Below, piece by piece: positions 580 through 60,670 of a stretch of DNA of 64,000 nucleotides. Below the pieces are notes generated by a model. It saw only the letters and a list, made by a program, of their open reading frames with translations, searched no databases and was not told the DNA's origin. Origin of the DNA: Haliotis rufescens (taxonomy: Eukaryota); the NCBI RefSeq assembly GCF_023055435.1, contig NW_025963890.1:17484001-17548000 (forward strand), written 5' to 3'. The stretch's first letter is position 1, and each line of letters opens with the position of its first letter. Made by a program: the position numbers and the translations under genes.

Positions 580-604
580 CTTGAACATAAGTGCTCGCAT
601 TCAT
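580..604 (-). CDS. Coding exon 1 (MNASTYVQ) of a seventh gene copy; exons 2-3 would lie left of the window
   Basis: GCCACCATG...CAAG|gtacaa matches the other copies, and 1-579 matches intron 1 of the other copies. Confidence 0.7.
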
Positions 605-1040
605 GGTGGCAGGTTCAAGAATTACAATAAAGTATAGGAAAATAACGCTTTCAGAACAGCCAAGTGCAGATGTAGCATCAAAAATGGCGTCGATGTAACA
701 TCAAAGTGACAACCGTCGTCAAGGAGGACATGCAGTCTCGTAAGATCACGCGATATTACAAAATAAAGTTAAACTGGCTCCCGACCTTATTTGCGCTTGC
801 ACTGGGGTGTTGGAGACGGAGCTCGGCTGTATTTTAAGGAGAGAAGTTAAGTCGCGCCATCATATAAATGGAGCAAAATAATTAATTATGAGCTGAACTA
901 ATTCCTCCAGGCACGATTCTGGGTGTTACTAGTTACTATTCAACCAGCAGCTTGTAAGGGTCCGTCAAATTTAAGGTACGACAGTGACTATAATCATACT
1001 ATGACTATTTTCATAACCAGCAATATGAAGGGTGCTAGGA
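605..1040 (-). promoter_or_regulatory. Putative promoter/5'UTR of the tandem gene; homologous blocks lie upstream of every copy
   Basis: Block conserved directly upstream of the ATG in all seven copies, richer in CpG than its flanks, with a YY1-like AAAATGGCG motif. Confidence 0.4.
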
Positions 1041-1136
1041 TTTATTCTGACCGGGACCTCACGGGGACTGGTATATCGAGATGACAGGTACCATCAGCAG
1101 ACCCTGCATGGTTGTTGGTACACTAGTTTCAGGTCA

Positions 1137-1300
1137 TGAGTGAGTGAGTATGGTTTTACGCCGCTTTTAGCAATATTCCAACAATATCACGGCGGGGGAC
1201 AACAGAAATGGGCTTCACACATTGTGCCGATGTTGGGAATCGACCCCGGGTCTTCAGCGTGACGAGCCAACGCTTTAACCACTAGGCTACTTCACCGCCC
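1137..1300 (-). mobile_element. tRNA-derived SINE with (ACTC)n tail; orthologous insertions at ~26250-26518 and ~32650-32913
   Basis: Minus strand has A-box-like TAGCCTAGTGG, B-box-like GGTCGATTCC and tail AAACCATACTCACTCACTCA. Confidence 0.8.
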
Positions 1301-1564
1301 CTTCAGGTCACGATCAGGTCATGCCCAGGGGCATGATCAACAATACTTGTCTTATGGAGTACACTGACTTGCTTGAACAGGATTGACATGACTTTACCCG
1401 AATAAAACACTTAAAACATTAAGTAGGAGACAGCTTTCATATTAGCTTTTTTCATTAAAGAAAAGATATTACATGGGGAAAATATCATGATATGAATATT
1501 TCAGTTTAAGAAATATAAATTAATGTAGAGGCTTCGTTAAAAATTCAAAACTGTCAATCAATGA

Positions 1565-2544
1565 ATGGACATTCCTTAAACAAGGTTTTTATGAGAGGTT
1601 TGCACCTGTTTAAGTTGCTTCAATTAGAAGTTCAGTTTATTCATTATGATTGGTATTGTAATAACTAAATTGGCATAATTACAAAGGTAAATCTTTCAAC
1701 CTTTAAAAATTAAATCAACTTAGAAAGTTTGATGTCTCATTCAGCTTTCAATCTTTTCCTGCAGCCATGATGTTCACAAGATGTCCTGGGAGGTTGTTAA
1801 CAAGCTGTATGGAGTAGCTGGGACTGGGAGACGCTGCAACATCCTGCTCGTGATAGATTTGATTCTGTCTTTGCCAGCTGCAACTGCAGAATGTGAAAGG
1901 GGATTCTCCCACATGAAAATTATAAAATCTCAATTCAGAAATAACCTGAAGAGTTCATCTATTACATTGTTGATGACAAGACAGCTACATTCTAATCATT
2001 CTAATGATTTACTACCTGATGAAGCCATCCACAAGTGGAACAAGTCCCATCATAGGAGGCCAGACTTCATGGACTATAAAAAGACTGTGCCAGAGCAGCT
2101 GAAAGAATCCCTTGAACAACTTGACCAATAAGACGAAGAAAATGATGATGCCATTGCAAGAGCAGCTGTTACCACGGATATTGCTACTAGATATCAAGAT
2201 TCTGACTATGAGTCAGACTTCAGTGACCTCGTTGAAGGAAGTGACAATCACAATCACACTGACAGTGATATGTACATTGATTGAAAGTCATGAGGCCCTA
2301 TTTAGGAATAAGGATACTTACATGATGTATTCTAGGATATTAAACACAAACCTGACCTATAAAGTGTTTGCTATTTCTTTTCTTGCGTTACTTCATGTTC
2401 AATGAATTCGATTTAAAGTTTTAATTAAATTATCCTGAGAAACATATGATTATAGTGGGCAGGCAGGTTTTGGTCAGGGCTGGCAAGTATTTCAGCTAGT
2501 CAGTCCTGTGGTCTGGCTGAAATTTTTGGGAGTTTCATACCCTG
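1565..2544 (+). mobile_element. hAT transposon 3' remnant with C-terminal dimerisation domain (ORF 1781-2131)
   Basis: LILSLPAATAECERGFSHMKIIKSQFRNNL matches the hAT dimerisation motif. Ends in TIR-like TTTCATACCCTG. Flanked by TCAATGA at 1558-1564 and 2545-2551. Absent from the other units. Confidence 0.85.
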
Positions 2545-2565
2545 TCAATGATCGATAAGTAATTA

Positions 2566-3987
2566 GAATAAGAGGCCCATAAGGCCTGTATCGCTCACCT
2601 GGATATTGACGCAATCATTACAAAATATACATTTGCATTGTACACGTGTATAATACTGCAAATATTTCGTAATTTTGACTCTGTCAGTATTTAAAATTGG
2701 TGGGTGGCAAATCTGACAGCATAAACGTGTATTTATGTAGATACAAATGTGGCACAAAAATCTGAGCCGTTTCCATGTTATGATCCCGGATATATCATAT
2801 TAAAGGTATTATTCTCTTCATAACAAACATATGTATACAATGCATCTGTTTGTTATAGGGTGGGGATAATATCGGTTTGCATGTAATGGTCAAGGTTTTA
2901 ACTCCTTTGGGAGTGCCAGACAGATGAACAGAAGGGCCAGTCCTGGTAGCATATGTGCAATCCTCTCATTATACTCTCAATTGTACATATGGTTTATACG
3001 GTGGGGATCTTAACTGTGTCCAAGTTATAAACTCTTTTTAGCCCCGCCCCTTAGTCCCCGGGGGTGGGGGTAGGGTTCAGCCCCTCCATTTCTCCAATTT
3101 GAATCCCCATCATTGGAGAATGCTTCCATCCAAATATGATTGATAACTATCTCTTAGTTCCAGAGAGGAAGTCGTCTGAAGCAATATGGCCGATTTACCC
3201 CCATTTCGCCCCGCCCCTCAGCCTCTTGGGGGGTGATCAGCCCTTTCATTTGTACAATTTTGAATTCTCTCCACCGGAGAATGCTTCCAACAATATATGG
3301 TTGATATCTATCTCTTAGTTCAAGAGAAGAAGTCGTTTAAAACAATTACGCCAAATTACCCCTATTTGGCCACGCCCCTCAGGGGGTTGGGGGTTGCGTC
3401 CCAGCCCCTCCATTTGTACAATGTTGAATTCTCACCACCCGAGAATGCTTCCAACCAAATATGGTTGATATCTATCTCATAGTTCCAGAGAAGAAGTCGT
3501 TTAAAGCAATATAACCAAATTACCCCTATTTGGCCCCGCCCCTCAGCAGTTTTGGGGGTGTCAGCCCAACCATTTGTACAGTTTTGAATTCTCACCACCG
3601 GAGAATGCTTCCAAACAAATATGGTTGATATCTATCTCTTAGTTCTTAGTTCTAGCCAAATTACCCCTATTTGGCCCCGTCCCTCAGCGATGTCAGCCCC
3701 ACCATTTGTACAATATTGAATCCCCAACACCTAGGGATGCTTCCAGTCTAATTTTGTTAATTTCCAATTAGTGAAAATTGTTTGATAGGCATTACTTAGA
3801 AGTTGACGGATGACAAGATAGACACAATTTTATGGATAACAACTTGGCAGTATTAAAGAAGTTGTTATCCATAAAATTGTGTCTATCTTCCAATTAGTGG
3901 TTCAGAAGAAGAAGTCGTTTGAATAAATTGTTGACGTACGGACGACGGACGACGGAGGCCAGGGTATGGCATGAGCTCACCTTGGTC
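2566..3987 (+). mobile_element. Helentron/HINE-like non-autonomous element with internal ~120-bp tandem repeats
   Basis: 5' end AATAAGAGGCCCATAAGGCCTGTATCGCTCACCTGG, repeated CCCCGCCCCTCAG...GAATGCTTCC units, GACG microsatellite, truncated 3' GCTCACCTTGGTC. Confidence 0.65.
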
Positions 3988-5695: not shown

Positions 5696-6092
5696 CTAAT
5701 CATCCTTCTTCTTAAACACACTCTTGACTCTTCTGAAGAAGTTGGCCACCCTGGATAGCAAGGCCTTCAGGAAGGAGTGGGTTGGCTGGATGATCTCCTC
5801 ATCCACGAGATCTACTTCAACAAAGTCAGTGTCGTCCACGATGTACTGACCAGCGATAGTGAGGGACACAGAAGGGACAGTGCTGGGGCGAAGGGTCTGT
5901 GGGACGGGCAGGTGAGACAAGTGGGCAGGGATGGTCAGGGACTTTGAAGTGGGTTGCTATAGATAGGGAGGTAGTGGAAAGAATGGAATGTGAGGAAAGA
6001 ATATTATGTAGATGGAAAAGGTTATTCAATCATTGAATTTTATTGCAGCAAAAAAAGGATTATGGTGGTAAAGATAGAAAAGGCGATAAATA

Positions 6093-6128
<36 letters not shown>

Positions 6129-7412
6129 GATACTGAAAGGTAGATAATTTGTTTGTTGTTTAAAAACGCCGCAATCAGCAGTACTCAAGCTACATGACGG
6201 CGGTCTGTAAACAATCGAGTCTGGGCTAGACAATCCAGTGATTGACATGATGAGCATCTATAGTAAAGATGATGACATGAAGGATATTCTTGGAAATACA
6301 AATGTGACAAACTTCGCAGAATTACCGAAGCCTTTGAACCAAACTACTCTCAACATTCATAATAGGTTTTTATTAATTGCACACTGTTGGAAGGTAGGAA
6401 AATAGTATAAACATTCAGTTACGGCTTTATGAAAACAGGGACCAGTACACAGAGGTGGGTGTTCCACATATTGGTGAAAACTCATGGAAGTACTAAACAG
6501 GCATTGCTAAAGACAAGCCTTTAGGACACCTACATGGCAAGGGGCAGGATAAGTCAGTTTGGACAGAGGCTGGAGGAACCAGATCATCCGATCAACTGTG
6601 GGGAAACAGAAGAATAAACATACAGGGTATTAAACACCCAGAATGTATGTTGCTGGTCCCTAACCTTTGGCTGGTGACTAGTAAATAATATATCATTTTG
6701 CAGTTAATAAATTATTTGTGCTGACAGATAGATGGTATATCGCTAAGCTTTTAGGGGTTCCCCTTTTCCAGAATGTTCCAGTTTTATGTTGGATAAAGGG
6801 TACTTGAAATAACCAATAAAGGGCAGCTAGCCTAGACACTGCAAAGTATATCTCCCTGTTACTTTATACCTTTCACTGCTAAACTAAGTCTATTTGATAA
6901 AATACAAGGGATTCAGCCTAGCCATACAATATTGATTTGGGCTCAGAGTTTATAAGAAATCATGGGCAGATCCAGGTTTATAAAAGTGGGGGATAGGGGA
7001 TGTTCCACTTGGGCTATTTGTAACTTCAGTGGGGGCAGTTCCCACCCAAAAGACTACCCCAAGACTCACAAACATTTCATATAAACCACTGTTAATAAAT
7101 TTACGGAATTCATTTTACAACCAAATCAACATGTTATCATGGTAGGAAAGGCGCATAAAGAATGTCATGAGTTGTAAAAAATACAGAGAACCCACATTTT
7201 ATTATAATGTTTACAAGTTCAAGGTACACAAAGGGCCCTGCATCTTAAGCCCCTAAAGCATGCAAAGTGTTTGTGGTTCAGTACAGGAATCATGACAGAT
7301 CATAAACATGATGATACACACTACCTCATGACACTAATATACCAACATGTAGGTACGGAATCTACTGAAGCGTAATTAGAATTGTACCTTGAATATAAGT
7401 GCTCGCATTCAT
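5696..7412 (-). CDS. Three-exon orphan gene, copy A: join(7412..7388, 6595..6534, 5956..5696); 115 aa MNASTYIQVDRMIWFLQPLSKLTYPAPCHQPTSKSLTIPAHLSHLPVPQ...RVANFFRRVKSVFKKKDD
   Basis: Start context GCCACCATG. Donor CAAG|gtacaa (phase 1), acceptor ttcttctgtttccccacag|, donor CAT|gtaggt (phase 0), acceptor ctacctccctatctatag|. Exons of 25+62+261 nt join into one open frame ending in TAG. Confidence 0.78.
6148..6260 (-). mobile_element. 5'-truncated SINE-like repeat in intron 2, present in all six complete gene copies
   Basis: (AAAC)n tail; same family as the longer copies at ~8045-8735 and ~40055-40245. Confidence 0.7.
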
Positions 7413-8271
7413 GGTGGCAGGTTCAAGAATTGCAATTAAGGACAGGAAAATAACGCTTTCAGACAAGCAAAGTGCAGATGTAGCATGAAAAATGGCGTCG
7501 ATGTAACATCAAAGTGACAACCGTCGTCAAGGAAGACATGAAGTCTCGTAAGATCACGCGATATTACAAAAAAGCGTCAACTGGCTCCCGACTTCATTTG
7601 CGATTGCACTTGGGTGTTATAGAGAGGAGCTCGGCTGTATTTTAAGGAGTGAAGTTAAGTCGCGCCATCATTTAAATGGAGCAAAATTAATTATGAGCTG
7701 AAATAATTCCCCCAGGCACGATTCTGGGTGTTACTAGTTACTATTCAACCAGCAGCTTGTAAGGGTCAGTCAAATTTATGGTACGACAGTGACTATAATC
7801 ATACTATGACTATTTTCATAACCAGCAATATGAAGGGTGCTAGGATTTATTCTGACCGGGACCTCACGGGGACTGGTATATCGAGATGACAGGTGCCATC
7901 ATCAGACCCTGCATGGTTGTTGGTACACTAGTTTCAGGTCATCACCAGGGGCATGTTCAACAATACTTGTCTACTGGAGTACTCTGACTTGCTAAAACAG
8001 GATTGACATGCATGACATAACCATAACAAACCACTTAAAACATAAGTTGTTGTTTAAGGCCACACTCAGCAATATTCCAGCTATATGACGGTGGTCTGTA
8101 AATAATCGAGTCTGGACCAGACAATCCAGTGATTGACATCATGAACATCGATCCATGCCATTGGGATACGATGACATGCATCAACCAAGTCAGCGAGTCT
8201 GACCACCCGATGCCGTTTGTCACCTCTTACGAAAAGCATAGTCGCCTTTTACGGCAAGTATGTGTTGCTTA

Positions 8272-30338: not shown

Positions 30339-32120
30339 CTAATCATCCTTCTTCTTAAACACACTCTTGACTCTTCTGAAGAAGTTGGCCACCCTAGATA
30401 GCAAGGCCTTCAGGAAGGAGTGGGTTGGCTGGATGATCTCCTCATCCACGAGATCTACTTCAACAAAGTCAGTGTCGTCCATGATGTACTGACCAGCGAT
30501 AGTGAGGGACACAGAAGGGACAGTGCTGGGGCTAAGGGTCTGTGGGACGGGCAGGTGAGACAAGTGGGCAGGGATGGTCAGGGACTTTGAAGTGGGTTGC
30601 TATAGATAGGGAGGTAGTGGAAAGAATGGAATGTGAGGAAAGAATATTATGTAGATGGAAAAGGTTATTCAATCATTGAATTTTTACTGCAGCAAATAAA
30701 AGATTATGGTGGTAAAGACAGAAAAGGGTATGACAAAAGAAACAAGGTAAATAAAGATGATATATAGTAGATACCGAAAGGTAAATATTTGTTTGTTGTT
30801 TAAAAACGCCGCACTCAGCAGTATTCCAGCTACATGACGGCAGCTGTAAACAATCGAGTCTTGACTAGGCAATCCAGTGATTGACATGATGAGCATCTAT
30901 AGTAAAAATGATGACTTGAAGGATATTCTTGGAAATACAAATGTGACAAACTTTACAGAATTACTGAAGCCTTTGAACCAAAGTACTCTCAACATTCGTA
31001 ATAGGGTTATATTAATTGCATACAGTTGGTTTCAGGTAGGAAAACAGTATAAACATTCAGTTACAGCTTTATGAAAACAGACCAGTACACAGAAGTGGGT
31101 GTTCGACATATCAGTGAAAACTCATGGAAGTGCTAAACAGGCATTGCTAAAGACAAGCCTTCAGGACACCTACATGGCAAGGGGCAGGATAAGTCAGTTG
31201 GGACAGAGGCTGGAGGAACCAGATCATCTGATCAACTGTGGGGAAAAAGAGGAATAAACATACAGGGTACTAAACACCCAGAATGTATGTTGCTGGTTCC
31301 TACTCTTTGGCTGGTGACTAGTAAATTATATATGTATTATTTTGCGGTTAATAAATTATTTGTGCTGACAGATAGGTGGTATATCGCTAAGCTTTTAGGG
31401 GTTCCCCTTTTCCAAAATGTTCCAGTTTTATGTTGGATAACGGGTAGATCTAATTGTAATAACCAAGGGCAGCTAGCCTAGACACTGCAAAGTATATCTC
31501 CCTGTTACTTTATAACTTGAACCCCTCAGACAAAATATGGGATAAGTTACAGTTTACCTTTCACTGCTAAACTAAGTCTATTTGCTAAAATACAAGGGAT
31601 TCAGCCAAGCCATACAATATTGATTTGGGCTCAGACTGCTGTGTCAGTTCTGAGAGTTTATAAGAAATCATGGGCAGATACAGGTTTATAAAAAAGGGAG
31701 TGGGGGACAGGGGATGTTCCACTTGGGCTATTTGTAACTTCAATACGGGCAGTTCCCACACAAAAGACTACCCCAAGACTCACAAACACTTCATGTAAAC
31801 CAATGATAATACATTTACAGAATTCATTTTACAACCAAATCAACATGTTACCATAGTAGGAAAGGCGCATAAAGAATGCCATGAGATGTAAAAGACACAA
31901 GAACCTACATTTTATTATAATGTTTACAAGTTCAAGGTATACAAAGGTCCCTGCATTCAACATCTTAAGCCCCTAAAGCATGCAGTGTTTGAAGATCAGC
32001 ACAGGAGCCATGATACACACTACAGACTGTACCTCATCACACTAAAATACCAACGTGTAGGTACAGAATCTACTGAAGCGTAATTAGAATTGTACCTTGA
32101 ACATAAGTGCTCGCATTCAT
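30339..32120 (-). CDS. Three-exon orphan gene, copy C: join(32120..32096, 31235..31174, 30599..30339); 115 aa
   Basis: Same exon structure. Substitutions R>Q in exon 2, R>S and V>M in exon 3. No indels or stops. Confidence 0.77.
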
Positions 32121-33192
32121 GATGACAGGTTCAGGAATTGCAATAAAGGATAGGAAAATAACGCTTTCAGAACAGCCAAGTGCAGATGTAGCATCAAAAA
32201 TGGCGTCGATGTAACATCAAAGTGACAACCGTCGTCAAGGAAGACATGAAGTCTCGTAAAATCACGCGATATTACAAAATAAAGTTAACTGGCTCTCGAA
32301 TTCATTTGCGCTTGCACTGGGGTGTTAGAGACGGAGCTCGGCCGTATTTTGTTGAGGAGAGAAGTTTAGTCGCGCCATCATATAAATGAAGCAAGATTAA
32401 TTATGAGCTGAAATAATTCCTCCAGGCACGATTCTGGGTGGTACTCGTTACTATTAAACCAGCAGCTTGTAAGGGTCCGTCAAATTTATGGCACGACAGT
32501 GACTAAAATCATACAATGGCTATTTTCATAACCAGCAATATAAGGGGTGCTCGGGATTTATTCTGACCGGGACCTCACGGGGACTGGTATATCGAGATGA
32601 CAGGTACCATCAGCCGACCCTGCATGGTTGGTACACTAGTTTCGGGTCATGAGTATGGTTTTACGCCGCTTTTAGCATTATTCCAGCAATATCACGGCTG
32701 GGGACAACAGAAATGGGCTTCAAACATTGTGCCCATGTTTGGAATCGACCCCAGGACCCTGTTCCACAAAGCGATCTTAGCGCTAAGTCGATCGGAACTC
32801 ACTTTCCTTAACACTGACTTACGACAGTCATAGCGCTAAGATTGCTTTGTGGAACGGGGTCCAGGTCTTCAGCGTGACGAGCCAACGCTTTAACCACTAT
32901 ACCCTACCGCCCCTTCAGGTCACGATCAGGTCATAACCAGGGGCATGTTCAACAATACTTTTCTTATGGAGTACATTGACTTGCTTGAACAGGATTGACA
33001 TGAATTTACCCAAACAAAACACTTAAAACATTAAGTAGGAGACAGCTTTCATATTAGCCTTTTTCATTACAGAAAAGATATTACATGGGGAAAAATATCA
33101 TGATATGAATATTTTAATTTAGGAAATATAAATTAATGTTGAAGCTTCGTTAAAAATTCAAAACTGGTAATCAATGATCGATAAGTAATGAG

Positions 33193-34652
33193 AATAAGAG
33201 GCCCATAGGGCCTGTATCGCTCACCTGGATATTGACGCAATCATGACAAAATATACATTTGCATTGTACATGTATATAATACTCCAAATATTTCGTAATT
33301 TTGATTTTGTCAGCATTTAATATGGGTGGATGGCCAATCTGACAGCATAAACGTGTATTTATCTAGATACAAATGTGGCATAAAGATCTGAACCGTTTCC
33401 ATGTTATGATCCAGGATAAATCATATTTAAGGTATTATTCTCTTCATAACAAACCAATGTATACAATGTATCTGTTTATTATAGGGTGGGGATAATATCG
33501 GTTTGCAAGTTATGGTCAAGATTTCCACTCCTTTGGGAGCGCCGGACAGATGAACAGAAGGGCAAGTCCTTGCAGCATATGTGCATTCCTCTCATTGTTC
33601 TCTCAATTGTACATATGGTTATACGGTTGGGATCTTAACTGTGTCCAAGTTATAAACTCTTTTTAGCCCCGCCCCTTAGTCCTCCGGGGTAGGGGTAGGG
33701 TTCAGCCCCTCCATTTCTCCAATTTGAATCCCCACCATTGGAGAATACTTCCATCCAAATATGGTTAAAAACTATCTCTTTGTACCAGAGAGGAAGTCTT
33801 CTGAAGCAATATAGCCAAACTACCCCTATTTCGCCCCGCCCCTCAGCCTCTTGGGGGATGATCAGCCCTTCCATTTGTACAATTTTGAATTCTCACCACC
33901 AGAGAATGCTTCCAACAATATATGGTTGATATCTATCTCTTAGTTCTAGAGAAGAAGTCGTTTAAAGTAATATGGCCAAATTACGCCTATTTCGCCCCGC
34001 CCCTCAGGCTCTTCAGGGGTGATCAGCCCTACCATTTGTACAATTTTGAATTCTCACCACCCACCGGGGAATGCTTCCAACAATATATGGTTGATATCTA
34101 TCTCTCAGTTCAAGAGAAGAAGTTATTTAAAACAATAACGCCAAATTACTCCTATTTGGCCCCGCCCCTCACTAGTTTGGGTGGGGGTGGGATGTCAGCC
34201 CCACCATTTGTACACCTAGGGATGCTTCCAGTCTAATTTTGTTAATTTCCAACTAGTGGTTCAGAAGAAGTTTAAAACGATAACGCCAAATTACTATTTG
34301 GCCACGTCCCTAAGCCCCTTAGGGTGTGATCAGCCCCTCCAATTGTACAGTTTTGAATCCTCACAACCGGAGAATGCTTCCACCCAAATATGATTGATAT
34401 CTATCTCTTAGTTCTGGAGAAGAAGTCGTTTAAAGCAATATAGCCAAATAACGCCTATTTGGCCCCGCCCCTCAGCCCCTGGGGGAGCCCCACCATTTGT
34501 ACAATTTTGTAATCCCACCACCTAGGGATGCTTCCAGTCTTATTTTGTTAATGTCCAACTAGTGGTTCAGAAGAAGAAGTCGTTTGAATAAATTGTTGAC
34601 GGATGATAGACGGACGACGGACGCCACGGTATGGCATAAGCTCACCTTGGTC
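33193..34652 (+). mobile_element. HINE-like element, third copy
   Basis: Near-identical to 26785-28245. Confidence 0.65.
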
Positions 34653-36746
34653 GGGTGGTCGACTGGTCGGCTCGGAGACAGTATACCGTGTCTGAATGGG
34701 TGTCAGTGTTAAACTGCGGCATGTTATCTGTGGACTAGCACTGTAAAACCGGCTAGTTCAAGGCAGCCACGCACGCACACACACACGTGCACGAACGTAT
34801 GCGCGACGTTAAACCCCATTTCACCTCACCTCACCTTACCAAGGTGATATCCATGTTGAAATGTATGGATGAAATATGATAGGCGTTGCATCATAACCGT
34901 TTAGCCGAGTTCTTGCATCTATTCCAATCAATGTCATGATGTTATGACAAAATGTTCCCAAGCCTCCAAAATATTATTGGCAACACTGAACCATGAACAC
35001 AGACTGCCAGAGATGGATACGCTCCTTCTCAACAGGAGGCGGTGGGTAGTCTATTGGTTAAAGGGTTAGCTCCTCATGCCGAAGACCCAGGTTCAATTGC
35101 CTACATGGGTACATGTGTGAAGCGCATATCTGGTGTCCCCCGCACTGATATTCGTGGAATATTGCTGAAAAAGGCGTAACACCGTACTCACTCACTCATT
35201 CGTTTTAAATTCATTTTACATGTTTGATTTGTATCCTGGGCCTACCAGGAATAGCCTGGTTGTCAAAGATGAAACATATTGCAACTGTACCAAAATGTAG
35301 ACCATTTAGTCAACAAGAAATGTTGCAACCAGAGGATGTATTCATCTTCGTCAGCCTGTATGTTCATGGTACAGTGTTCATTGTACATTGTGTGCGTGCG
35401 TGTAACAATTGTTTGGAACCTTGGAAACACAATGCTGTGGGGCCATGACATTAATCCAGTGTCGGAAAGAACTCCACAAAATGATTTGTGGTACAACGCC
35501 TGCCACACTCCATGCATTAATTTCCCATGGTGGTCAGAAGTTATGTATTGCTCGTGGTACAACTTTCTACTCCATGATTTGATTATTACCAAACATTTTG
35601 CAAGTAATATATTTCCTAAATATTGTAACAAATGCCTCAAGAGTCCTAAAGGAGGACTCACTCATTCATGAGTTTCACATATTTATTATCCTAAAAACAC
35701 TTGTGTGAAGATTAAGTAATGCCCGTGTAAACTGCCCAGTATGTGAGTGGATGTGATGTTTGGAATGTTAATTTCTTTCCAGAATTAAATAGGTTGAAAC
35801 ACCTGTTCAAATGGTGCACCTGCGTGCCGTCCCAGATGTAGCAGCTGTTTATGGACTACATGTGTGATTACCATGCGTTAGTCTAGAGTGAGTGAGTGAG
35901 TTGGGTTTAACGCCGCTTTTACCAGTATTCCAGTTATATCACGGCGTGTCAGCTTAATGTGGGAGGAAAGCCCGAAGTGATGCAGGTCTGAGACGTTTAC
36001 CACTTCGGGGAAACCCACGAGCACGGGTATGGTGCTGACAAACCTAGAAACATAATCGGGGCGAACAGGGATTCGAACCACAATCATAGGTTTCTGACGT
36101 GCCCAAGGGACGCAACTCCGCACAGAGAATCGCGGCGCCTTTATAGACGACTGGGCCACCCGTGCCCCCTCAGAGTTTAAACAGCGTTGGTGAATACGTA
36201 ATGTTAAAAGATCAGATCAACTATTCTATTCCTGAACCAAAACTATTAGAATCTTATTCCCACATAAAAATGGGAATCACATTCCTTTAATAGTCAAACA
36301 GTGAAAACACAATCTGTCCATGACGGAACGTCCAACGCTAACCACGAGTTTTTTGCTTGGCTCGATCAATCGAAAATACAACAAATATACGATGCTACCT
36401 CTGATAGAATACCTACAACCTACTTCTTGGCATTGTTATCTGCAATATGTGATACAAGACGGCCTTATTTCGACCAATATTAATGCATACATACCTAAAA
36501 CAGAGAGAGAGATGTCAGGTCATAGTCAAGAACATAGACAGAAAATAGCAGAAAAGGAACAAATCAAAACAAAACAAAATGTTGTAACAAATAATGTATT
36601 TCATTAACATAAAGGAAATAGCCAAAACAAACAGAGATAGATTTTTATGTATTTCCCAAATATTGTAACAAATGCCTCAACAGTCCTAAAATGATTCATA
36701 AATGTTTTGTATATAAGTATATACATATGTGTTCAGAGTTCACTGC

Positions 36747-37439
36747 CTAATCATCCTTCTTCTTAAACACACTCTTGACTCTTCTGAAGAAGTTGGCCAC
36801 CCTAGATAGCAAGGCCTTCAGGAAGGAGTGGGTTGGCTGGATGATCTCCTCATCCACGAGATCTACTTCAACAAAGTCAGTGTCGTCCACGATGTACTGA
36901 CCAGCGATAGTGAGGGACACAGAAGGGACAGTGCTGGGGCTAAGGGTCTGTGGGACGGGCAGGTGAGACAAGTGGGCAGGGATGGTCAGGGACTTTGAAG
37001 TGGGTTGCTATAGACAGGGAGGTAGTGGAAAGAATGGAATGTGAGGAATGTATATTATGTAGATGGAAAAACATAGAAAAGGTGTGAAAAAAGAAACAAG
37101 GTAAATATATATATATAAAATGATTTGGATACACTTTCCTTATATCATTTTGCAACTCTGAGTTTCACGCACCCATGTTATTACGTACGATCATCAGGCA
37201 TAATGAAACATGATTTTTAGTTTAACCCTTTCTTTTTTGCTCGGCTTGGGGGTTTACCATGGCGACAGGTGAAAATGAGCTCGCTTCTTTTGTTTAGCTT
37301 GTTGGATGTTAGCGTGAAACTTAGCACGTTAGCATGGGTGCATGAAACTCAGAGTTGCAAAATGATATAAGGAAAGTGTATCCAAATCTGTATTTATGCT
37401 CTACTTGTATTGAGCACTCTCTTCTGCAATTGGATCGTA

Positions 37440-37515
<76 letters not shown>

Positions 37516-38606
37516 GTAGATACCGAAAGGTAGATAATTTGTTTGTTGTTTAAAAACGCCACTCAGCAGTATTGCAGCTACATGACGGCGGTCTGTAAAC
37601 AGTCGAGTCTGGACTAGACAATCCAGTGATTGACATCATGAGCATCTATAGTATAGAGATGATGACATGAAGGATATTCTTGGAAATACAAATGTGACAA
37701 ACTTCGCAGAATTACTGAAGCCTTTGAACCAAAGTACTCTCAACATTCATAATAGGGTTTTATTAATTGCATACTGTTGGTTTAAGGTAGGAATATAGTA
37801 TAAACATTCAGTTACAGCTTTATAAAAACAGGGACCAGTACACAGAGGTGTTCCACATATCGGTGAAAACTCATGGAAGTGCTAAACAGGCATTGTTAAA
37901 GACAAGCCTTTATGACACCTACATGGCAAGGGGCAGGATAAGTCAGTTGGGACAGAGGCTGGAGGAACCAGATCATCCGATCAACTGTGGGGAAACAGAA
38001 GAATAAACATACAGGGTATTAAACGCCCAGAATGTATGTTGCTGGTCCCTAACCTTTGGCTGGTGACTAGTAAATAATATATCATTTTGCAGTTAATAAA
38101 TTATTTGTGCGGACAGATAGGTGGTATATCGCTAAGCTTTTAGGGGTTCCCCTTTTCCAAAATGTTGCAGGGGTGTGTTCCACTTGGGCTATTTGTAACT
38201 TCAATACGGGCAGTTCCCACACAAAAGACTACCCCAAGACTCACAAACACTTTATGTAAACCACCTATATTAATACATTTACGGAATTCATTTTACAACC
38301 AAATCAACATGTTATCATGGTAGGAATGGTGCATAAAGAATGTCGTGAGATGTAAAAAGAACACCAGAACCCATGTTTTCTTATAATGTTTACAAGTTCA
38401 AGGTACACAAAGGGCCCTGCATTCAACATCTTAAGCCCCCAAAGTATCAAAGTGTTTGTGGTTCAGTACAGGAGTCATGATAGATCGTAAACATGATGAT
38501 ACACACTGCCTCATCACACTAATACACCAACAATGGCAACATGTAGGTACGGAATCTACTGAAGCGTAATTAGAATTGTACCTTGAACATAAGTGCTCGC
38601 ATTCAT
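36747..38606 (-). CDS. Three-exon orphan gene, copy D: join(38606..38582, 37984..37923, 37007..36747); 115 aa
   Basis: Exons and splice sites are intact despite a fold-back insertion, a (GT)n tract and deletions in the introns. Confidence 0.77.
37122..37388. mobile_element. Fold-back element in intron 2 of copy D
   Basis: 56-bp near-perfect inverted arms at 37122-37177 and 37333-37388. Confidence 0.8.
37442..37508. repeat. (GT)n microsatellite
   Basis: Uninterrupted TG run seen directly. Confidence 0.97.
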
Positions 38607-41600: not shown

Positions 41601-41858
41601 CTAAACAGTTACATTGAAGTTCACAAGTTGATTTAAGTAAGTATACCTGGTAGGTCATTATGTTCCTGGAAAAATGTCACCAGGTAAACTATTTCTGATA
41701 TGTGTTCAGATGTATTCCGTTGTGCATTGTGATTGAGACTTTGGGGCTGTATGCCGTTGGAAAATAAATGGTGACCTGACATCTCTCTCTCTCTGTTTTA
41801 GGGTATATTGTTGTGAGGCTGACAACTTGGCGAGCGTGCCAGGATCAGCATATGTTGC

Positions 41859-48056: not shown

Positions 48057-48422
48057 CCATATTCGACGTGATAAGGACCCAGGGCACTCTCATAATTAGA
48101 AATAGGTGACTCTTACTAGAATAAAATTTTGGTGGATTAAAAAAACACAGTTGAAAGATCGTAAATTTCGTGGTTTATGCTGACAGCCTGAAATGATACA
48201 AAAGAAAAGTCTGTTTGTATTATACACGACAGATATATTTTTCTAGAATTTAATTGCCCATAATTATGGGTGCATATAACACACGTGTGTATTATACAGG
48301 AATAAATAAGTCTTGTGTATATTGATCAATTGGAAGGAATTGCGATTGTTCACTAGCCAATATATTAGCAAATACCGCCATGGGCGCTTATTAGAGCAAG
48401 GTGCTTATTAGACCGAATACGG
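48057..48422. mobile_element. Same MITE in the 3' LTR of gypsy copy 2
   Basis: Same termini and same LTR position as 22520-22887. Confidence 0.75.
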
Positions 48423-49341
48423 TAATAAGTTAACATTGTTGAACTTTTATTCTATTTACATGTAACAGACTTGAATGTCCAAATATGTAATCATAGATAG
48501 GTAAAATTATGCATATTGTTGCATTAAATACACAATCCAGAAGTAATGGTTTTTGATTAAGCCTAATGGTATAGTGTAAAAGTGACTATTTGCATGTATT
48601 ATTTCCATTATGAGAATCGTTTTTTCTTGCTAAAACTTGTAATAGATATAGTAATTTTTGTATAATATGTATGAAGGCTGTTTATGCAAGTAGTATTCTA
48701 AATACTGTATTCCTGTGACAGGTGTGTATTATGATTATTGTAGACATCTTGAATGTTGAGACTGATGTATCAGCAGTAGCTAAACAGTTACATTGAAGTT
48801 CACAAGTTGATTTAAGTAAGTATACCTGGTAGGTCATTATATTTCCTGGAAAAATGTCACCAGGTAAACTATTTCTGATATGTGTTCAGATGTATTCCGT
48901 TGCGCATTGTGATTGAGACTTTGGGGCTGTATGCCTTGGGAAATAAATGGTGACCTGACATCTCTCTCTCTCTCTGTTTTAGGGTATATTGTTGTGAGGC
49001 TGACAACTTGGCGAGCGTGCCAGGATCAGCATATGTTGCTTGAAGTCCACCACGACAACATTGAAGATGTCAGAGACAGAGTGGAGCAATTGCTTATGGA
49101 CTACAAGTGTGATCACCATGCGTTAGTCTAGAACATAGCCAGAAAATAGCAGAAAAGGAGCAACTAAACAAACAAAATGTTGTAACAAATAATGTATTTC
49201 ATTAACATAAAGAAAACAGCCAAAAAAAACAGATGAATTTTATGTATTTCCTAAATATTGTAACAAATGCCTCAACAGTCCTAAAATGATTCATAAATGT
49301 TTTGTATATAAGTATATACATATGTGTTTAGAGTTCACTGC

Positions 49342-54500: not shown

Positions 54501-56035
54501 TCCATCTCTATCTTATCTACGAGGGCCATTCAATATATAACCAGCCTAAGCTATTTATCAGATCTTAACGGTTGCATGTTTGTCACGTGCTGTGCACCAA
54601 TGTATGTCACGTGCATAGACAAAGTTTCACTGAGGAAATTGTATTTGAAGTCACACACGTGATCTATAAAGATGGCAAGGGTAGATTCTGCCAAATTTTC
54701 GTCAAAGGTTAAATACAGGGCTGCTATTAGGTACCTCTACTTAAAAGGGAAACCGGGAAAGGAGATACATGATGAATTGTCAGATGTTTATGGTGACAGT
54801 GCACCTTCGTATGCACAAGTCAAATTCTGGGTTGCAGAATTTAAGAGGGGTCGGGTGAACCTGGAAGATGAGCCACGCCCTGGCAGGCCTGTAGAGGTGA
54901 CCAATTACCAAACCATTTAAGCTGTGAGACAACTGGTTGTCAAAGACAGGCGAATGAAGGTGTCAGAAATGGCCAAGGCCTTGGACATTTCAGAGGGAAG
55001 TGTCCATACCATTTTGCATGATCGTCTGGGTGTGAGGAAGCTGTCTGCCCGATGGGTCCCGAAATGTCTGAGTGATGATCAGAAGGCTGTACGTGCGTCA
55101 ATGTGTCAGGCACTTTTGACGCAATGCAGTCGGGATGCAGACAACTTTATGGAGAGAATTGTTACTGGTGATGAAACCTGGGTACACCACTTTGACCCAG
55201 AAACCAAAGAACAGAGTAAGCAGTGGACTTGCTTTGCTTCACCCTGTCCCCACAAGTTTAAGACTCAACCATCGGCTGGCAAAGTCATGGCAACCATCTT
55301 TTGGGATACCAAAGGGGTCTTGCTCATTGACTACTTGCCACGTGGCCAGACTATTACTGGAGAGTACTACTCCGATCTCCTGGACCGTTTGCCGACTGCT
55401 ATTCTTGCCAAACGTCGTGGAAAGATCACAAAAGCTGTGCTGCTCCAACATGATAAAGCCAGAGTGCACACCTGTCGACTTGCGGTTGCCACAGTGAAGT
55501 GGAACGGGTTCAAAGTATTGCCTCATCCACCTTACTCACCAGACCTGGCACCAAGCGACTACTTTCTCTTCCCAAACTTGAAGAAAGAACTGCGTGGACG
55601 TCATTTCCGGTCCGATGATGAACTCACGACAGCAGTGGAGGGGTGGTTACACAAACAACCCCATGGTTTCTATCAAAACGGGCTTTTAGCTCTCACACAT
55701 CGCTGGACAAAGTGCATAAACCTCAATGGTGGTTATGTGGAAAAAGAAGAAGTGAGGAGCAGTAGCAATAGGTTAGGCTGGTTATATATTGAATGGCCCT
55801 CGTACATCATCTCGCTCTGTACTATCTGCTAGAGTAGGAAACACTTCCTGTAAATTACCTGTTCTAGCATTCAAATCACCTATCAATAATATAGGATCAT
55901 ATCTAAACTTAATAGCTTGGTCTAAAAGTAACTCTTCTAATTCAATAATACCATTTTTCTCAAGTTTGTTGTCATAATATCTGGAATATTGTGGTGGTAT
56001 ATATGTACATCCATACAACACGTCACGATTATGAC
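51591..56035 (-). mobile_element. 5'-truncated, degraded non-LTR retrotransposon (RTE-X/CR1-group-like ORF2)
   Basis: Endonuclease ILLIGDLNARTG; RT NYRGITL, QAGFREG, FVDFKKAFDSV, GLKQGC, LLFADD; C-terminal RICQNC...EDEFH...C; 3' end with GGGCCCGAGGCC and AATAAA. Confidence 0.9.
54520..55802 (+). mobile_element. mariner (DD34D) transposon nested in the LINE; transposase from 54672 with one in-frame stop at 54918-54920
   Basis: Perfect 30-bp TIRs CGAGGGCCATTCAATATATAACCAGCCTAA with TA flanks; motifs WVPKCL, TGDETW, HDKARVH, YSPDLAPSDY. Confidence 0.96.
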
Positions 56036-56135
56036 AAAATATCATGATATGAATATTTAAATGTAAGAAATATAAATTAATGTTGAAGCTTCGTTAAAAA
56101 TTCAAAACTTGTAATCAATGATCGATAAGTAATTA

Positions 56136-57217
56136 GAACAAGAGGCCCACAGGGCCTGTATCGCTCACCTGGATATTGACAAAATATACATTTGCATTGT
56201 ATATGTATATAATACTCCAAATATTTCGTAATTTTGATTCTGTCAGCATTTAATATGGGTGGATGGCAAATCTGACAGCATGAACGTGTACTCGTATCTA
56301 TCTAGATACAAATGTGGCATAAAGATCTGAACCGTTTCCATGTTATGATCCAGGATAAATCATATTAAAGGTATTGTCATAGCGACTGATTTACGACACC
56401 CATTGTCTGAAGAACATTTAATTGCAAAGGTTCATTACCCTGGAGCCGTGACATCTTTATGCCTTGAAAGACTTAATTGCTGTCATTTATAAGATACTAA
56501 TCCTATTTGTTAATCCCCATTTTTGTGTACATCGTCCGTCTGCCATCCTGAACGAGATGTGCAAGTATGTCACTGATGATTTACTGTTTACATTTATATT
56601 TATTACTTACTAAATGTCAGGTGACCTTGGCTATATAAGCCTTGGTCCAGAGAGGAGAGAAAGAAAGGTCTAACCCTAGGGTTAGGCTGGGTGCTCGGGG
56701 CACCAAGACAACAACCACAACAACTATGTGCTGACCTGGCACAAAGTGTCTTTTGTATGTATATATCTACATGTATAAAGTAAAACTGTATATACCGCAA
56801 GCCATCGTCTCCAAGTTGTCACTTCCTACAGGAACCATACGTCAGATCAGACAATTAACGCCAAATTACTCCTATTTGGCAACGCCCCTCCATTTGTACA
56901 ATTTTGAATTCTCACCACCCGAGAATGCTTCCAACCAAATATGGTTGATATTCTCTTAGTTCCAGAGAAGTCGTTTGAAGCAATATAGCCAAATTACCCC
57001 TATTTGGCCCCACCCCTCAGCAGTTTAGGGGCGGGTGGGGATGGGATGTCAGCCCCACCATTTGTACAATTTTGAATCCCCACCACCTAGGGATGCTTCC
57101 AGTCTAATTTTGTTAATTTCCAACTAGTGGTTCAGAAGAAGAAGTCGTTTGAATAAATTGTTGACGGATGACAGACGGACGACGGACGCCACGGTATGGC
57201 ATAAGCTCACCTTGGTC
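56136..57217 (+). mobile_element. HINE-like element, fourth copy, interrupted and internally deleted
   Basis: Same termini; carries the 56375-56853 insertion. Confidence 0.6.
56375..56853 (+). mobile_element. Probable solo LTR of an unrelated family
   Basis: TGTC...GACA termini, internal TATATAA and AGTAAA; absent from the other HINE copies; no TSD because of an adjacent deletion. Confidence 0.55.
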
Positions 57218-58931
57218 GGGTGGTCGGCTCGGAGTCAGTATACTGTGTCTGAATGGGGTGTCAATGTTAAACTGCGGCATTTTTTCTCAGTGGACTAGCA
57301 CTGTAAAACCGGCTAGTTCAAGCAGCCCATACGCACACACACACACACACACACACACGTGCATGAACGTCGCAATATGCACGACGTTAAACCCCATTTC
57401 ACCTCACCTCACCTCACCAAGGTGATATCCATGTTGAAATGTATGGATGAAATATGATAGGCGTTGCATCATAACCGTTTAGCCGAGTTCTTGCATCTAT
57501 TCCAATCAATGTCATGATGTTATGACTAGATGTTCCAAAGCCTCCAAAATATTATTGTCCACACTGAACCATGAACACAGACTGCCAGAGATGGATACGC
57601 TCCTTCTCAACAGGAGGCGGTGGGTAGCCTATTGGTTAAAGGCTTAGCTCCTCATGCCGAAGACCCAGGTTCAATTGCCTACATGGGTACATGTGTGAAG
57701 CGCATATCTGGTGTCCCCCGCACTGATATTCGTTGAATATTGCTGAAAACGACGTAACACCGTACTCACTCATTCGTTTTTAATTCATTTTACATGTTTG
57801 ATTTGTATCCTGGGCCTACCAGGAATAGCCTGGTTGTCAAAGATGAAACATATTGCAACTGTACCAAAATGTAAACCATTTAGTCAACAGAGATGTTGCA
57901 ACCAGAGGATGTATTCATCTTCGTCAGCCTGTATGTTCATGGTACATTGTGTGCGTGCGTGCGTGCGTGTAACAATTGTTTGGAACCTTGGAAACACAAT
58001 GCTGTGGGGCCATGACATTAATCCAGTGTCGGAAAGAACTCCACAAAATGATTTGTGGTACAACGCCTGCCACACTCCATGCATTAATTTCCCATAGTGG
58101 TCAGAAGTTATGTATTGTTCGTGGTACAACTTTCTACTCCATGATTTGATTATTACCAAACATTTTGCAAGTAATATATTTCCTAAATATTGTAACAAAT
58201 GCCTCAAGAGTCCTAAAAGAGGACTCACTAATTCATGAGTTCCACATATTTATTATCCTAAAAACACTTGTGTGAAGATTAAGTAATGCCAGTGTAAACT
58301 GCCCAGTATGTGAGTGGATGTGACGTTTGGAATGTTAATTTCTTTCCAGAATTAAATAGGTCAAACACCTGTTCAAATGGTGCACCTGAGTGCCGTCCCA
58401 GATGTAGCAGCTGTTTATGGACTACGTGTGTGAGACTAGAGTGAGTGAGTGAGTTGGGTTTAACGCCAGTATTCCAGTTATATCACGGCGTATCAGCTTA
58501 ATGTGGGAGGAAAGGCCGAAGTGATGCAGGTCTCAGACGTTTACCACTTCGGTGAAACCCACGAGCACGGGTATGGTGCTGACAAACCTAGAAACATAAT
58601 CGGGGCGAACAGGGATTCGAACCCACAATCATAGGTTTCTGGCGTGCCCAAGGGACGCAACTGCACAGCGAATCCCGGCGCCTTTATAGACGACTGGGCC
58701 ACTGCGTTAGTCTAGAACATAGCCAGAAAATAGCAGAAAAGGAACCAATCAAAACAAAACAAAATGTTGTTACAAATAATGTATTTCATTAACATAAAGT
58801 AAATAGCCAAAAACAAACAGAGATAGATTTTATGTATTTCCCAAATATTGTAACAAATGCCTCAACAGTCCTAAAATGATTCATAAATGTTTTGTATATA
58901 AGTATATACATATGTGTTCAGAGTTCACTGC

Positions 58932-60670
58932 CTAATCATCCTTCTTCTTAAACACACTCTTGACTCTTCTGAAGAAGTTGGCCACCCTAGATAGCAAGGC
59001 CTTCAGGAAGGAGTGCGTTGGCTGGATGATCTCCTCATCCACGAGATCTACTTCAACAAAGTCAGTGTCGTCCACGATGTACTGACCAGCGATAGTGAGG
59101 GACACAGAAGGGACAGTGCTGGGGCGAAGGGTCTGTGGGACGGGCAGGTGGGACAAGTGGGCAGGGATGGTCAGGGACTTTGAAGTGGGTTGCTATAGAT
59201 AGGGAGGTAGTGGAAAGAATGGAATGTGATGAATGAATATTATGTAGATGGAAAAGGTTATACAATCATTGAATTTTATTGCAGCAAATAAAAGATTATG
59301 GTGGTAAAGACAGAAAAGGTGTGACAAAAGAAACAAGGTAAATAAAGATGATATATATAGTAGATACCGAAAGGTAGATAATTTGTTTGTTGTTTAAAAA
59401 CGCTGCAATCAGCAGTATTCCAGCTACATGACGGCGGTCTGTAAACAATCGAGTCTGGAATGGACAATCCAGTGATTGACATGATGAGCATCTATAGTAA
59501 AGATGATGACTTGAAGGATATTCTTGGAAATACAAATGTGACAAACAGAATTACTGAAGTCGTTGAACCAAAGTACTCTCAACATTCATAATAGGGTTTT
59601 ATTAATTGCATACTGTTGGTTTAAGGTAGGAATATAGTATAAACATTCAGTTACAGCTTTATAAAAACAGGGACCAGTACACAGAGGTGTTCCACATTTA
59701 GGTGAAAACTCATGGAAGTGCTAAACGGGCATTGTTAAAGACAACCCTTTATGACACCTACATGGCAAGGGGCAGGATAAGTCAGTTGGGACAGAGGCTG
59801 GAGGAACCAGATCATCCGATCAACTGTGGGGAAACAGAAGAATAAACATACAGGGTATTAAACATCCAGAATATATGTTGCTGGTCCCTAACCTTTGGCT
59901 GTTGACTAGTTAATAATATATCATTTTGCAGTTAATAAATTATTTGTGCTGACAGATAGGTTGTATATAGCGAAGCTTTTAGGGGTTCTCCTTTTCCAAA
60001 ATGTTCCAGTTTTATGTTGGATAAAGGGTAATTGAACTTGAACTTGAACCCCCCAGATAAAATATAGGATAATAAGTTACAGTTTACCTTTCACTGCTAA
60101 ACTAATTCTATCTGATAAAATACAAGGGGTTCCGCCTAGCCATACAATATTGATTTGGACTCAGACTGCTGTGTACATTCTGAGAGTTTATAAGAAATCA
60201 TGAGCAGTTTCAGGATTTTAAAAAAAGGGAGTGGGGGCAGGGGTGTGTTCCACTTGGGCTATTTGTAACTTCAGTAGGGGCACTTCCCACCCAAAACACT
60301 ACCAAAGACTCACACACACTTCATGTAAACCACCGTTAATAAATTAACGAAATTAATTTTACAACCAAATGAACATGTTATCATGGTAGGAACGGCGCAT
60401 AAAGAATGTCGTGAGATGTAAAAAAAACAAACCCAACAGAACCCACATTTTCTAATAATGTTTACAAGTTCAAGGTACACAAAGGGCCCTGCATTCAACA
60501 TCTTAAGCCCCTAAAGCATGCAAAGTGTCTGTGGTTCAGTACAGGAATCATGACAGATCATAAACATGATGATACACACTACCTCATGACAGTAATATAC
60601 CAACATGTAGGTACGGAATCTACTGAAGCGTAGTTAGAATTGTACCTTGAACATAAGTGCTCGCATTCAT
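58932..60670 (-). CDS. Three-exon orphan gene, copy F: join(60670..60646, 59823..59762, 59192..58932); 115 aa
   Basis: Same exon structure with GACACCATG start. Its private exon-3 changes are synonymous. Confidence 0.78.

What the first reader, a model, noticed from the sequence alone, without database searches (positions are those of the whole stretch)
580..60670. Hidden tandem family of at least seven three-exon genes encoding an unrecognised 115-aa protein
Seen: the recurring 74-aa ORF (TTG pseudo-start) is the tail of a 261-nt terminal exon. Two small upstream exons (25 and 62 nt) have phase-compatible GT-AG junctions and a Kozak-type ATG. All are preserved in six complete copies, with no indel or stop in any exon, while introns and spacers carry many indels and transposon insertions. 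Consensus: MNASTYVQVDRMIWFLQPLSQLTYPAPCHQPTSKSLTIPAHLSHLPVPQTLRPSTVPSVSLTIAGQYIVDDTDFVEVDLVDEEIIQPTHSFLKALLSRVANFFRRVKSVFKKKDD. I do not recognise the family. Inference: a lineage-specific, amplified gene family, and the most likely novel system in this window.
Basis: partly seen in the sequence, partly recalled or inferred. Interest (0 to 1): 0.9.

Follow-up and report, generated by a model that had tools for sequence, protein, structure and literature searches.

The report
Abalone-only tandem small-protein gene family
Seven tandem copies of a real three-exon gene encode a 115-residue, mostly disordered protein found only in abalones; RefSeq already lists these genes as 'uncharacterized protein', so the family is genuine and unstudied but not hidden.

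Summary
Six complete copies and a seventh that starts in the window lie on the minus strand. Each has exons of 25, 62 and 261 nt, GT-AG borders, and no indel or stop in any exon. Introns are full of indels and vary about ten times more than exon 3.

The genome is red abalone (Haliotis rufescens). The genes are not hidden: RefSeq proteins named 'uncharacterized protein LOC1241387xx / LOC12538203x' match copies c4, c5 and c6 over all 115 residues. They match c1, c2 and c3 over the C-terminal 104-107 residues.

Diverged paralogues keep the three exons, the splice sites and an open frame, with dN/dS 0.19-0.63. Homologues turned up only in four Haliotis species, plus one unnamed 503-bp ENA contig. 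The family belongs to a superfamily with at least 85 loci in this genome, mostly in tandem arrays. It has no Pfam, PDB or literature match.

The protein is predicted to be disordered except for a C-terminal basic amphipathic helix. An invariant acidic F-x-x-V/I motif lies just before that helix. Function is unknown. My guess, at about one in four, is a docking adaptor built from short motifs. RNA evidence here was inconclusive.

Verdict: a real, already annotated, taxonomically restricted gene family of moderate interest.

The parts
580..604 (-). copy c0, exon 1 only (ATG plus 22 nt); its exons 2 and 3 lie left of the window on the same contig
5696..7412 (-). copy c1: exon 1 7388-7412, exon 2 6534-6595, exon 3 5696-5956 (stop included)
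   Evidence: RefSeq protein P0021 equals its last 104 residues
23976..25725 (-). copy c2: exons 25701-25725, 24808-24869, 23976-24236
   Evidence: P0013 shares its last 107 residues but uses another 5' exon
30339..32120 (-). copy c3: exons 32096-32120, 31174-31235, 30339-30599
   Evidence: P0023 (104 aa) matches from the internal Met
36747..38606 (-). copy c4: exons 38582-38606, 37923-37984, 36747-37007; (TG)33 microsatellite in intron 2
   Evidence: full-length identity to P0024
49342..51117 (-). copy c5: exons 51093-51117, 50202-50263, 49342-49602
   Evidence: full-length identity to P0019
58932..60670 (-). copy c6: exons 60646-60670, 59762-59823, 58932-59192; its product equals the family consensus
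   Evidence: full-length identity to P0012; contigs laid
5813..5836 (-). acidic F-x-x-V motif of copy c1 (residues 69-76); the Phe, and the Leu five residues after it, are invariant in the whole superfamily
5705..5776 (-). C-terminal basic amphipathic helix of copy c1 (about residues 89-112)
   Evidence: AlphaFold helix 89-112; hydrophobic moment 0.6-0.7
7413..7800 (-). conserved 5' flank of copy c1 (5' UTR and presumed promoter), with a block about 95-115 nt before the ATG kept in diverged paralogues
30339..36746 (-). one whole repeat unit of 6.4 kb (gene plus repeat-rich spacer); 96.9% identical end to end to the previous unit, 85-93% to the others

Best explanation
The array is seven tandem paralogues of a genuine protein-coding gene of red abalone. 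Each gene has three exons and encodes 115 residues. The array arose by repeated duplication of a whole 6.4-kb unit, and transposons later inserted into the spacers. The exons, above all exon 3, are held nearly constant by purifying selection, possibly helped by local gene conversion. The genes are already in RefSeq as 'uncharacterized protein'. They belong to a superfamily seen only in Haliotis, with at least 85 loci in this genome. The product has no signal peptide and no membrane span. It is predicted to be disordered apart from a C-terminal basic amphipathic helix. Just before that helix sits a strongly acidic stretch holding an invariant Phe-x-x-Val/Ile motif. Everything up to here is shown or well supported. 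The mechanism is inferred only, at about one chance in four. On that reading it is a small cytosolic adaptor made of short linear motifs. The basic helix would dock it on a membrane surface or on a helix-binding partner. The acidic aromatic motif would recruit a second protein by strand addition, with an Atg8/LC3-type protein as the obvious candidate. High copy number would then serve dosage.
For: Structure and copy number. Exons versus introns: (p = 1e-12). Identity to RefSeq proteins of H. rufescens; contig C112 is 79,745,701 bases long, the same length as the contig recorded for those proteins. Coding constraint: four diverged paralogues keep the ATG, the GT-AG sites and an open frame. Overall dN/dS is 0.19-0.63, and 0.07-0.42 in residues 56-115. 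For the most diverged pair, synonymous versus nonsynonymous changes give p = 3e-8. The same three-exon plan, with a 25-nt exon 1, occurs in remote subfamilies. The exon-3 product is 94-95% identical in H. rubra. Range: only Haliotis among 5.8 billion clustered and 1.84 billion representative proteins. Protein features: helix 89-112 is the only confident element. Hydrophobic moment is 0.44-0.76 across subfamilies, there is no span-like hydrophobic stretch, and net charge is -8 for residues 56-89 and +6 for 90-115. F74, L79 and S97 are invariant in 45 sequences.
Against: No run on record as RNA holds the gene. No joint at the model introns was among those listed. Contigs in three runs pass unspliced through the exon 3 acceptor. 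So transcription and splicing rest on RefSeq models and on evolutionary conservation, not on reads seen here. Within the array, all changes in exons 1-2 are nonsynonymous, and dN/dS for that part reaches 0.9-1.3 in some pairs, so the N-terminus is weakly constrained. Synonymous diversity in exon 3 (about 0.02, my count) is below intron diversity. Gene conversion or RNA-level constraint therefore adds to protein-level selection. Nothing tested here supports the proposed partners. The motif classes named are short and common.
Confidence: 0.8

Rival explanations
1. The protein is a precursor of a cationic helical host-defence peptide. The acidic segment would neutralise the basic C-terminal helix until it is released, and tandem amplification would give high output, as for other mollusc antimicrobial peptide families.
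For: Charge is -8 next to +6, and the terminal helix is strongly amphipathic. The only confident structure is that helix. The genes are tandemly amplified and evolve fast at the N-terminus.
Against: There is no N-terminal hydrophobic signal sequence and no span. No dibasic or other evident processing site lies between the acidic part and the helix. The acidic motif is as conserved as the helix, which is unusual for a mere pro-piece.
Confidence: 0.1
2. It is an ampliconic germline or early-embryo gene family. The copies would be kept numerous and near-identical for dosage or intragenomic conflict, with the biochemical role secondary.
For: There are many near-identical copies in several arrays on different chromosomes. 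Homogeneity centred on the exons exceeds what protein-level selection alone predicts. The family is restricted to one genus.
Against: No expression data could be obtained. Copies of different species share identical exon-3 products, which fits plain purifying selection as well. This reading does not exclude the adaptor model.
Confidence: 0.12
3. It is not a working protein gene. The conserved blocks would be kept alike by gene conversion or an RNA-level role, and the open frame and the RefSeq models would be by-products of ab initio prediction.
For: Spliced RNA was not shown here. UTR-like flanks of exon 3 are as conserved as the coding part. Changes in exons 1-2 are all nonsynonymous within the array.
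Against: dN/dS is well below 1 between paralogues with dS up to 0.5. Frame, start codon and splice sites are retained in subfamilies only 35-45% identical in protein. There is no Rfam match.
Confidence: 0.05
4. It is a gene carried or spread by a transposable element.
For: The spacers are full of transposon pieces, and the family sits on many contigs.
Against: There is no Pfam or transposon domain in the product. Copies form head-to-tail arrays with 6-7.5 kb spacing rather than dispersed insertions. Contig depth over the gene is tens to hundreds, against 100,000 or more for the neighbouring SINE-like repeats.
Confidence: 0.03

Closest known systems
RefSeq 'uncharacterized protein' genes of Haliotis rufescens (LOC124138760, LOC124138761, LOC124138763, LOC124138764, LOC125382034, LOC125382035) and their relatives in H. 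cracherodii, H. rubra and H. asinina
   Same: These are the same genes. Three proteins are identical over 115 residues and three over the last 104-107 residues. The three-exon coding structure is the same.
   Different: Nothing differs in sequence. RefSeq gives no family name, domain or function.
LIR/AIM-bearing Atg8-binding adaptors, such as the acidic F-type motifs of optineurin or FUNDC1 (from my own knowledge)
   Same: An aromatic-x-x-aliphatic core is preceded and followed by acidic residues and lies in a disordered region. The core is kept in all subfamilies.
   Different: No homology to any known adaptor, and no evidence of binding. The motif class is short and frequent by chance.
Anionic-propiece / cationic-helix antimicrobial peptide precursors (from my own knowledge)
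   Same: An acidic segment sits next to a basic amphipathic helix of about 24 residues. The gene family is tandemly amplified and taxon-restricted.
   Different: No signal peptide and no processing site.
Ampliconic, taxonomically restricted multi-copy gene arrays of animals (from my own knowledge)
   Same: Near-identical copies in head-to-tail arrays, amplified as whole units and restricted to one genus.
   Different: Tissue of expression and any link to the germline are unknown.

Membership tests
Annotated Haliotis 'uncharacterized protein' family (RefSeq) | Sequence identity of the predicted product to the database proteins | tested here: met
   c4 = P0024, c5 = P0019 and c6 = P0012 over 115 residues; c1, c3 and c2 over 104, 104 and 107 residues
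Annotated Haliotis 'uncharacterized protein' family (RefSeq) | Same genome record | tested here: met
   The window contig is 79,745,701 bases long, the same length as the contig recorded for the H. rufescens proteins
Protein-coding gene under selection | dN/dS below 1 and an intact frame in diverged paralogues | tested here: met
   omega is 0.19-0.63; all four diverged paralogues are intact
Protein-coding gene under selection | Spliced transcripts across both introns | tested here: inconclusive
   One contig leaves the genome exactly at the exon 1 donor, with 28 further letters, as a 31-mer graph would give for an exon 1 to exon 2 junction. No joint was listed, and contigs run through the exon 3 acceptor
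LIR/AIM Atg8-binding proteins | Core [W/F/Y]-x-x-[L/I/V] with acidic flanks in a disordered region | tested here: met
   F-V-E-V, F-V-E-I or F-V-D-I in all subfamilies, with the Phe invariant; disorder
LIR/AIM Atg8-binding proteins | Physical binding to an Atg8-family protein | not testable with these tools
   Needs pull-down or calorimetry with abalone GABARAP/LC3 and motif mutants
Secreted cationic antimicrobial peptide precursors | N-terminal signal peptide | tested here: not met
   Best 19-residue Kyte-Doolittle mean is 0.75 and lies mid-protein; the N-terminus is polar
Secreted cationic antimicrobial peptide precursors | Cationic amphipathic mature peptide next to an anionic part | tested here: met
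   Hydrophobic moment up to 0.70; charge +6 beside -8
Transposable-element protein | Match to a transposase, reverse transcriptase or other TE domain | tested here: not met
   No Pfam family for exon 3 or for 11 full-length members
Any Pfam, PDB or Rfam family | Significant profile match | tested here: not met
   Pfam best E = 0.14; PDB best E = 0.75; Rfam none

The most novel reading that the evidence does not exclude
The abalone-only superfamily (at least 85 loci here, with no relative elsewhere among 1.84 billion representative proteins) would be a young, massively amplified class of motif-based adaptors. Its invariant acidic F-x-x-V/I motif would bind Atg8-family proteins. Its basic amphipathic helix would tether it to membranes. 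That would make it a lineage-specific regulator or receptor of selective autophagy, or of another membrane-trafficking step, kept in high dosage by tandem arrays.
Probability: 0.1. Interest if true: 0.6.

Novelty: new member of a known kind. Interest (0 to 1): 0.3.

Why it matters
The array is a clean example of a taxonomically restricted gene family. It is intact, under selection and amplified to dozens of copies, yet it has no domain, structure, paper or name. For abalone biology (aquaculture, conservation genomics) it marks a large block of expressed-looking genes of unknown role. For gene-origin studies it offers a family whose birth, intron-exon plan and expansion can be traced within one genus. 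It is not a new kind of system. The gene models are already public, so the value lies in defining the family and proposing tests, not in discovery of the locus.

Tried and rejected
1. Complex prediction of residues 56-92 of P0012 with a full-length GABARAP (P0193, an insect protein used as proxy because the abalone gene is split into exons). The score was 0.13 against a mark of 0.34, so no verdict. It counts neither for nor against binding.
2. Pfam on exon 3 and on 11 members: nothing apart from MitoNEET_N at E = 0.14, which is noise.
3. PDB profile search: only transferrin receptor at E = 0.75, noise.
4. ESM Atlas: no usable hit for P0001; scores of 0.77 for P0067 are in the chance range.
5. 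Rfam and tRNA scans: nothing.
6. Paper searches by topic and by twelve LOC identifiers: nothing relevant.
7. The profile hit to a catfish granulin (P0031) is a low-complexity false positive.
8. The profile search of the genome seemed to extend exon 3 upstream to profile position 13. This is the polypyrimidine tract read in frame, and it ends in the TAG of the acceptor, so it was rejected as coding.
9. Exon-over-intron depth in the laid contigs was rejected as evidence of RNA. Exon words are shared by about 20 paralogues, so they are deeper in DNA as well.
It was rerun reading the protein from file.
12. My first typed DNA pattern was a wrong guess at the codons and found nothing.
13. The joined 115-aa model was never sent to a search tool. 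Exon 3 was searched by reference, and after that only database proteins were used. Exons were joined only inside local scripts, to check the frame, compute dN/dS and compare with RefSeq proteins.
Full report
**What is in the sequence**

The ORF list shows the same 74-aa TTG-start ORF six times on the minus strand.
- The 261-nt block occurs six times at 98.9-100% identity.
- The 62-nt block occurs six times at 95-100%.
- The 25-nt ATG block occurs seven times; the extra one is at 580-604.

In every copy exon 1 starts at an ATG in a CCACC or CATC context and ends before GTACAA. Exon 2 follows a pyrimidine tract plus CAG or TAG and ends before GTAGGTG. Exon 3 follows TATAG. The phases add up to a 115-codon frame. 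The seventh copy is complete: its exons 2 and 3 lie just left of the window on the same contig and are intact. A genome-wide search places exactly seven exon-3 copies in this array.

**Is it more than chance or recent duplication?**

I aligned the six gene bodies with 600-nt flanks.
- The exons have no gapped column. The introns have 367 of 902 and 501 of 1000 gapped columns.
- Nucleotide diversity is 0.013, 0.027 and 0.008 for exons 1-3, against 0.083 and 0.062 for the introns.
- Exon 3 versus introns, by variable columns, gives p = 1e-12.

The whole 6.4-kb unit is repeated. Units c2 and c3 are 96.9% identical from end to end. The others are 85-93% identical, yet exon 3 stays at 98.9% or more.

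A sliding profile shows one very sharp conserved block. It covers exon 3 plus about 40 nt of intron and about 80 nt of 3' flank. A second block covers exon 1 plus about 200 nt upstream. Exon 2 stands out only weakly.

Within the array all six differences in exons 1-2 change the residue. Exon 3 has three silent and two replacing differences. So the array alone does not prove protein-level selection.

**Test with diverged copies**

The genome holds further copies on five other contigs and elsewhere on this contig, at 83-99% identity. I fetched four diverged ones, L001, L002, L003 and L005.
- All four keep the three exons in order, the ATG, the donor and acceptor sites, and an open frame of 111-115 codons.
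- Their introns are only 71-79% identical over the alignable part.
- Nei-Gojobori dN/dS is 0.19-0.63 over the whole frame, 0.07-0.42 for residues 56-115, and 0.3-1.3 for the part encoded by exons 1-2.
- For the most diverged pair, dS is 0.53 and dN is 0.10, with p = 3e-8 for silent versus replacing changes.

The gene is therefore protein-coding and constrained. Constraint is strong in the C-terminal half and weak at the N-terminus.

**It is already annotated**

Searching exon 3 by reference returned 115-aa 'uncharacterized protein' entries. They come from Haliotis cracherodii, H. rubra, H. rufescens and H. asinina. Cluster members include H. rufescens LOC124138760, -61, -63, -64 and LOC125382034 and -35. 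These lie on a contig of 79,745,701 bases, which is exactly the length of the window's contig. So the window is red abalone.

Matches between the window copies and RefSeq proteins:

| Copy | RefSeq protein | Extent of identity |
|---|---|---|
| c4 | P0024 | all 115 residues |
| c5 | P0019 | all 115 residues |
| c6 | P0012 | all 115 residues |
| c1 | P0021 | from the Met inside exon 2 (104 residues) |
| c3 | P0023 | from the Met inside exon 2 (104 residues) |
| c2 | P0013 | last 107 residues, with another 5' exon |

**Range and size of the family**

A profile of eleven members was scored against 1.84 billion representative proteins. It found only abalone proteins, one unnamed 503-bp ENA contig, and a spurious granulin. 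A second profile search added more abalone subfamilies at 34-46% identity.

In the window's genome the profile hits about 85 exon-3-like loci, which is a lower bound. Most lie in arrays with 6-7.5 kb spacing on many contigs. Remote subfamilies use the same plan of three exons, a 25-nt exon 1 and a GTAGGTG donor after exon 2. The structure therefore predates the expansion.

**The protein**

Pfam, PDB, the Atlas, Rfam and the literature gave nothing. AlphaFold, with 11 and then 45 sequences, predicts disorder throughout (mean pLDDT 55 and 63). The exception is a helix at 89-112.
- That helix has a hydrophobic moment of 0.6-0.7. The matching segment reaches 0.44-0.76 in the other subfamilies.
- No stretch is hydrophobic enough for a signal peptide or a membrane span.
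- Residues 56-89 carry net charge -8 and residues 90-115 carry +6.
- Across 45 sequences the invariant positions are F74, L79 and S97. F15, L42, L45, P46, S90, L96, R98 and R105 are nearly invariant.
- F74 heads a core F-V-E-V (F-V-E-I or F-V-D-I elsewhere) that sits between acidic runs.

**How it may work**

This part is inferred, not shown. A disordered protein whose only conserved features are short motifs and one amphipathic basic helix most likely acts by docking. The helix would bind a membrane surface or a helix-binding partner. The acidic aromatic motif would bind a second protein. The motif fits the LIR/AIM pattern of Atg8-binding proteins; that comparison rests on my own knowledge. 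I give this adaptor reading about one chance in four.

The rivals are a host-defence peptide precursor (weakened by the lack of a signal peptide), an ampliconic germline family (untestable here), a non-coding conserved block (contradicted by dN/dS), and a transposon gene (no support).

**RNA evidence**

No run on record as RNA holds the gene. Fourteen small runs are only guessed to be RNA. I laid the contigs of four of them on copy c6.
- Contigs cover introns as well as exons.
- No joint at the model introns is among the fifteen listed; 99 more are not shown.
- Contigs in X3, X7 and X9 run through the exon 3 acceptor.
- In X2 one 771-letter contig matches 60646-60848 and has exactly 28 further letters beyond the exon 1 donor.
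- Two other X2 contigs end at 59825 and start at 59796.

The X2 geometry is what a 31-mer graph gives if exon 1 is joined to exon 2 alongside the unspliced form. The depths of 10.4 and 6.3 add up to roughly the 15.5 of the shared contig. This is my inference, not a listed joint, and a C/T difference between paralogues at the same base blurs it. Higher depth on exons is no evidence either, because exon words are shared by about twenty copies. Splicing therefore remains to be shown by reads.

- The joined model was not sent to any search tool. Exon 3 was searched by reference, and afterwards only database proteins were used.
- The complex prediction gave no verdict and is listed only under Tried and rejected.

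**Verdict**

This is a real, already annotated, abalone-restricted, tandemly amplified family of small disordered proteins of unknown function. It is a new member of a known kind of thing, a taxonomically restricted multi-copy gene family, and is of moderate interest.

Noticed in passing
window 15648-23048 and 40541-49088: Two copies of one LTR retrotransposon family on the + strand. They have RT and RNase H domains, and the pol frame is split into many ORFs. They are about 90% identical to each other over 7.4 kb, with roughly 690-bp terminal repeats. They sit in the c1-c2 and c4-c5 spacers and account for the longer spacing there.
   Followed up: partly
window 14423-15337 (-), 54672-55832 (+), 51730-54248 (-), 1781-2131 (+): Other transposon pieces: a Tc1-like DDE_3 transposase with an HTH domain, a mariner-type transposase (Transposase_1), a LINE-type reverse transcriptase next to it, and a hAT dimerisation fragment.
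   Followed up: partly
window 58460-58690 and 59370-59560: Short elements with contig depth of 100,000 to over a million in all four runs laid, and with many internal joints. They are probably SINE-like repeats. One lies just downstream of copy c6 and one inside its intron 2.
   Followed up: no
window 3061-3645, 27295-27764, 33702-34171: Tandem repeats of 161-164 bp (about 3 copies each) that form part of every spacer unit.
   Followed up: no
window 7413-7800 and the matching flanks of the other copies: The upstream 300 nt are better conserved between diverged paralogues (77-85%) than the introns are (71-79%). One block about 95-115 nt before the ATG is nearly invariant in 15 genes. It is followed by a CGCCATTTT-type element that resembles a YY1 site; that resemblance is from memory and untested.
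   Followed up: partly
window exon 3 of all copies: Silent-site diversity in exon 3 (about 0.02) is three to four times lower than intron diversity. The sharp conserved block runs past the coding part on both sides. This suggests local gene conversion or RNA-level constraint on top of protein selection.
   Followed up: partly
G000 C490:1.88-1.96 Mb, C57:4.24-4.30 Mb and 0.43-0.55 Mb, C66:0.05-0.27 Mb, C523:1.39-1.56 Mb, C13:21.6 Mb: Large tandem arrays of remote subfamilies of the same superfamily, with up to ten copies at about 7-kb spacing. All are annotated only as uncharacterized proteins.
   Followed up: partly
L008 2074-2120 (G000 C223): One paralogue has a 15-nt in-frame deletion in exon 2. 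This matches the 110-aa RefSeq protein P0018.
   Followed up: no
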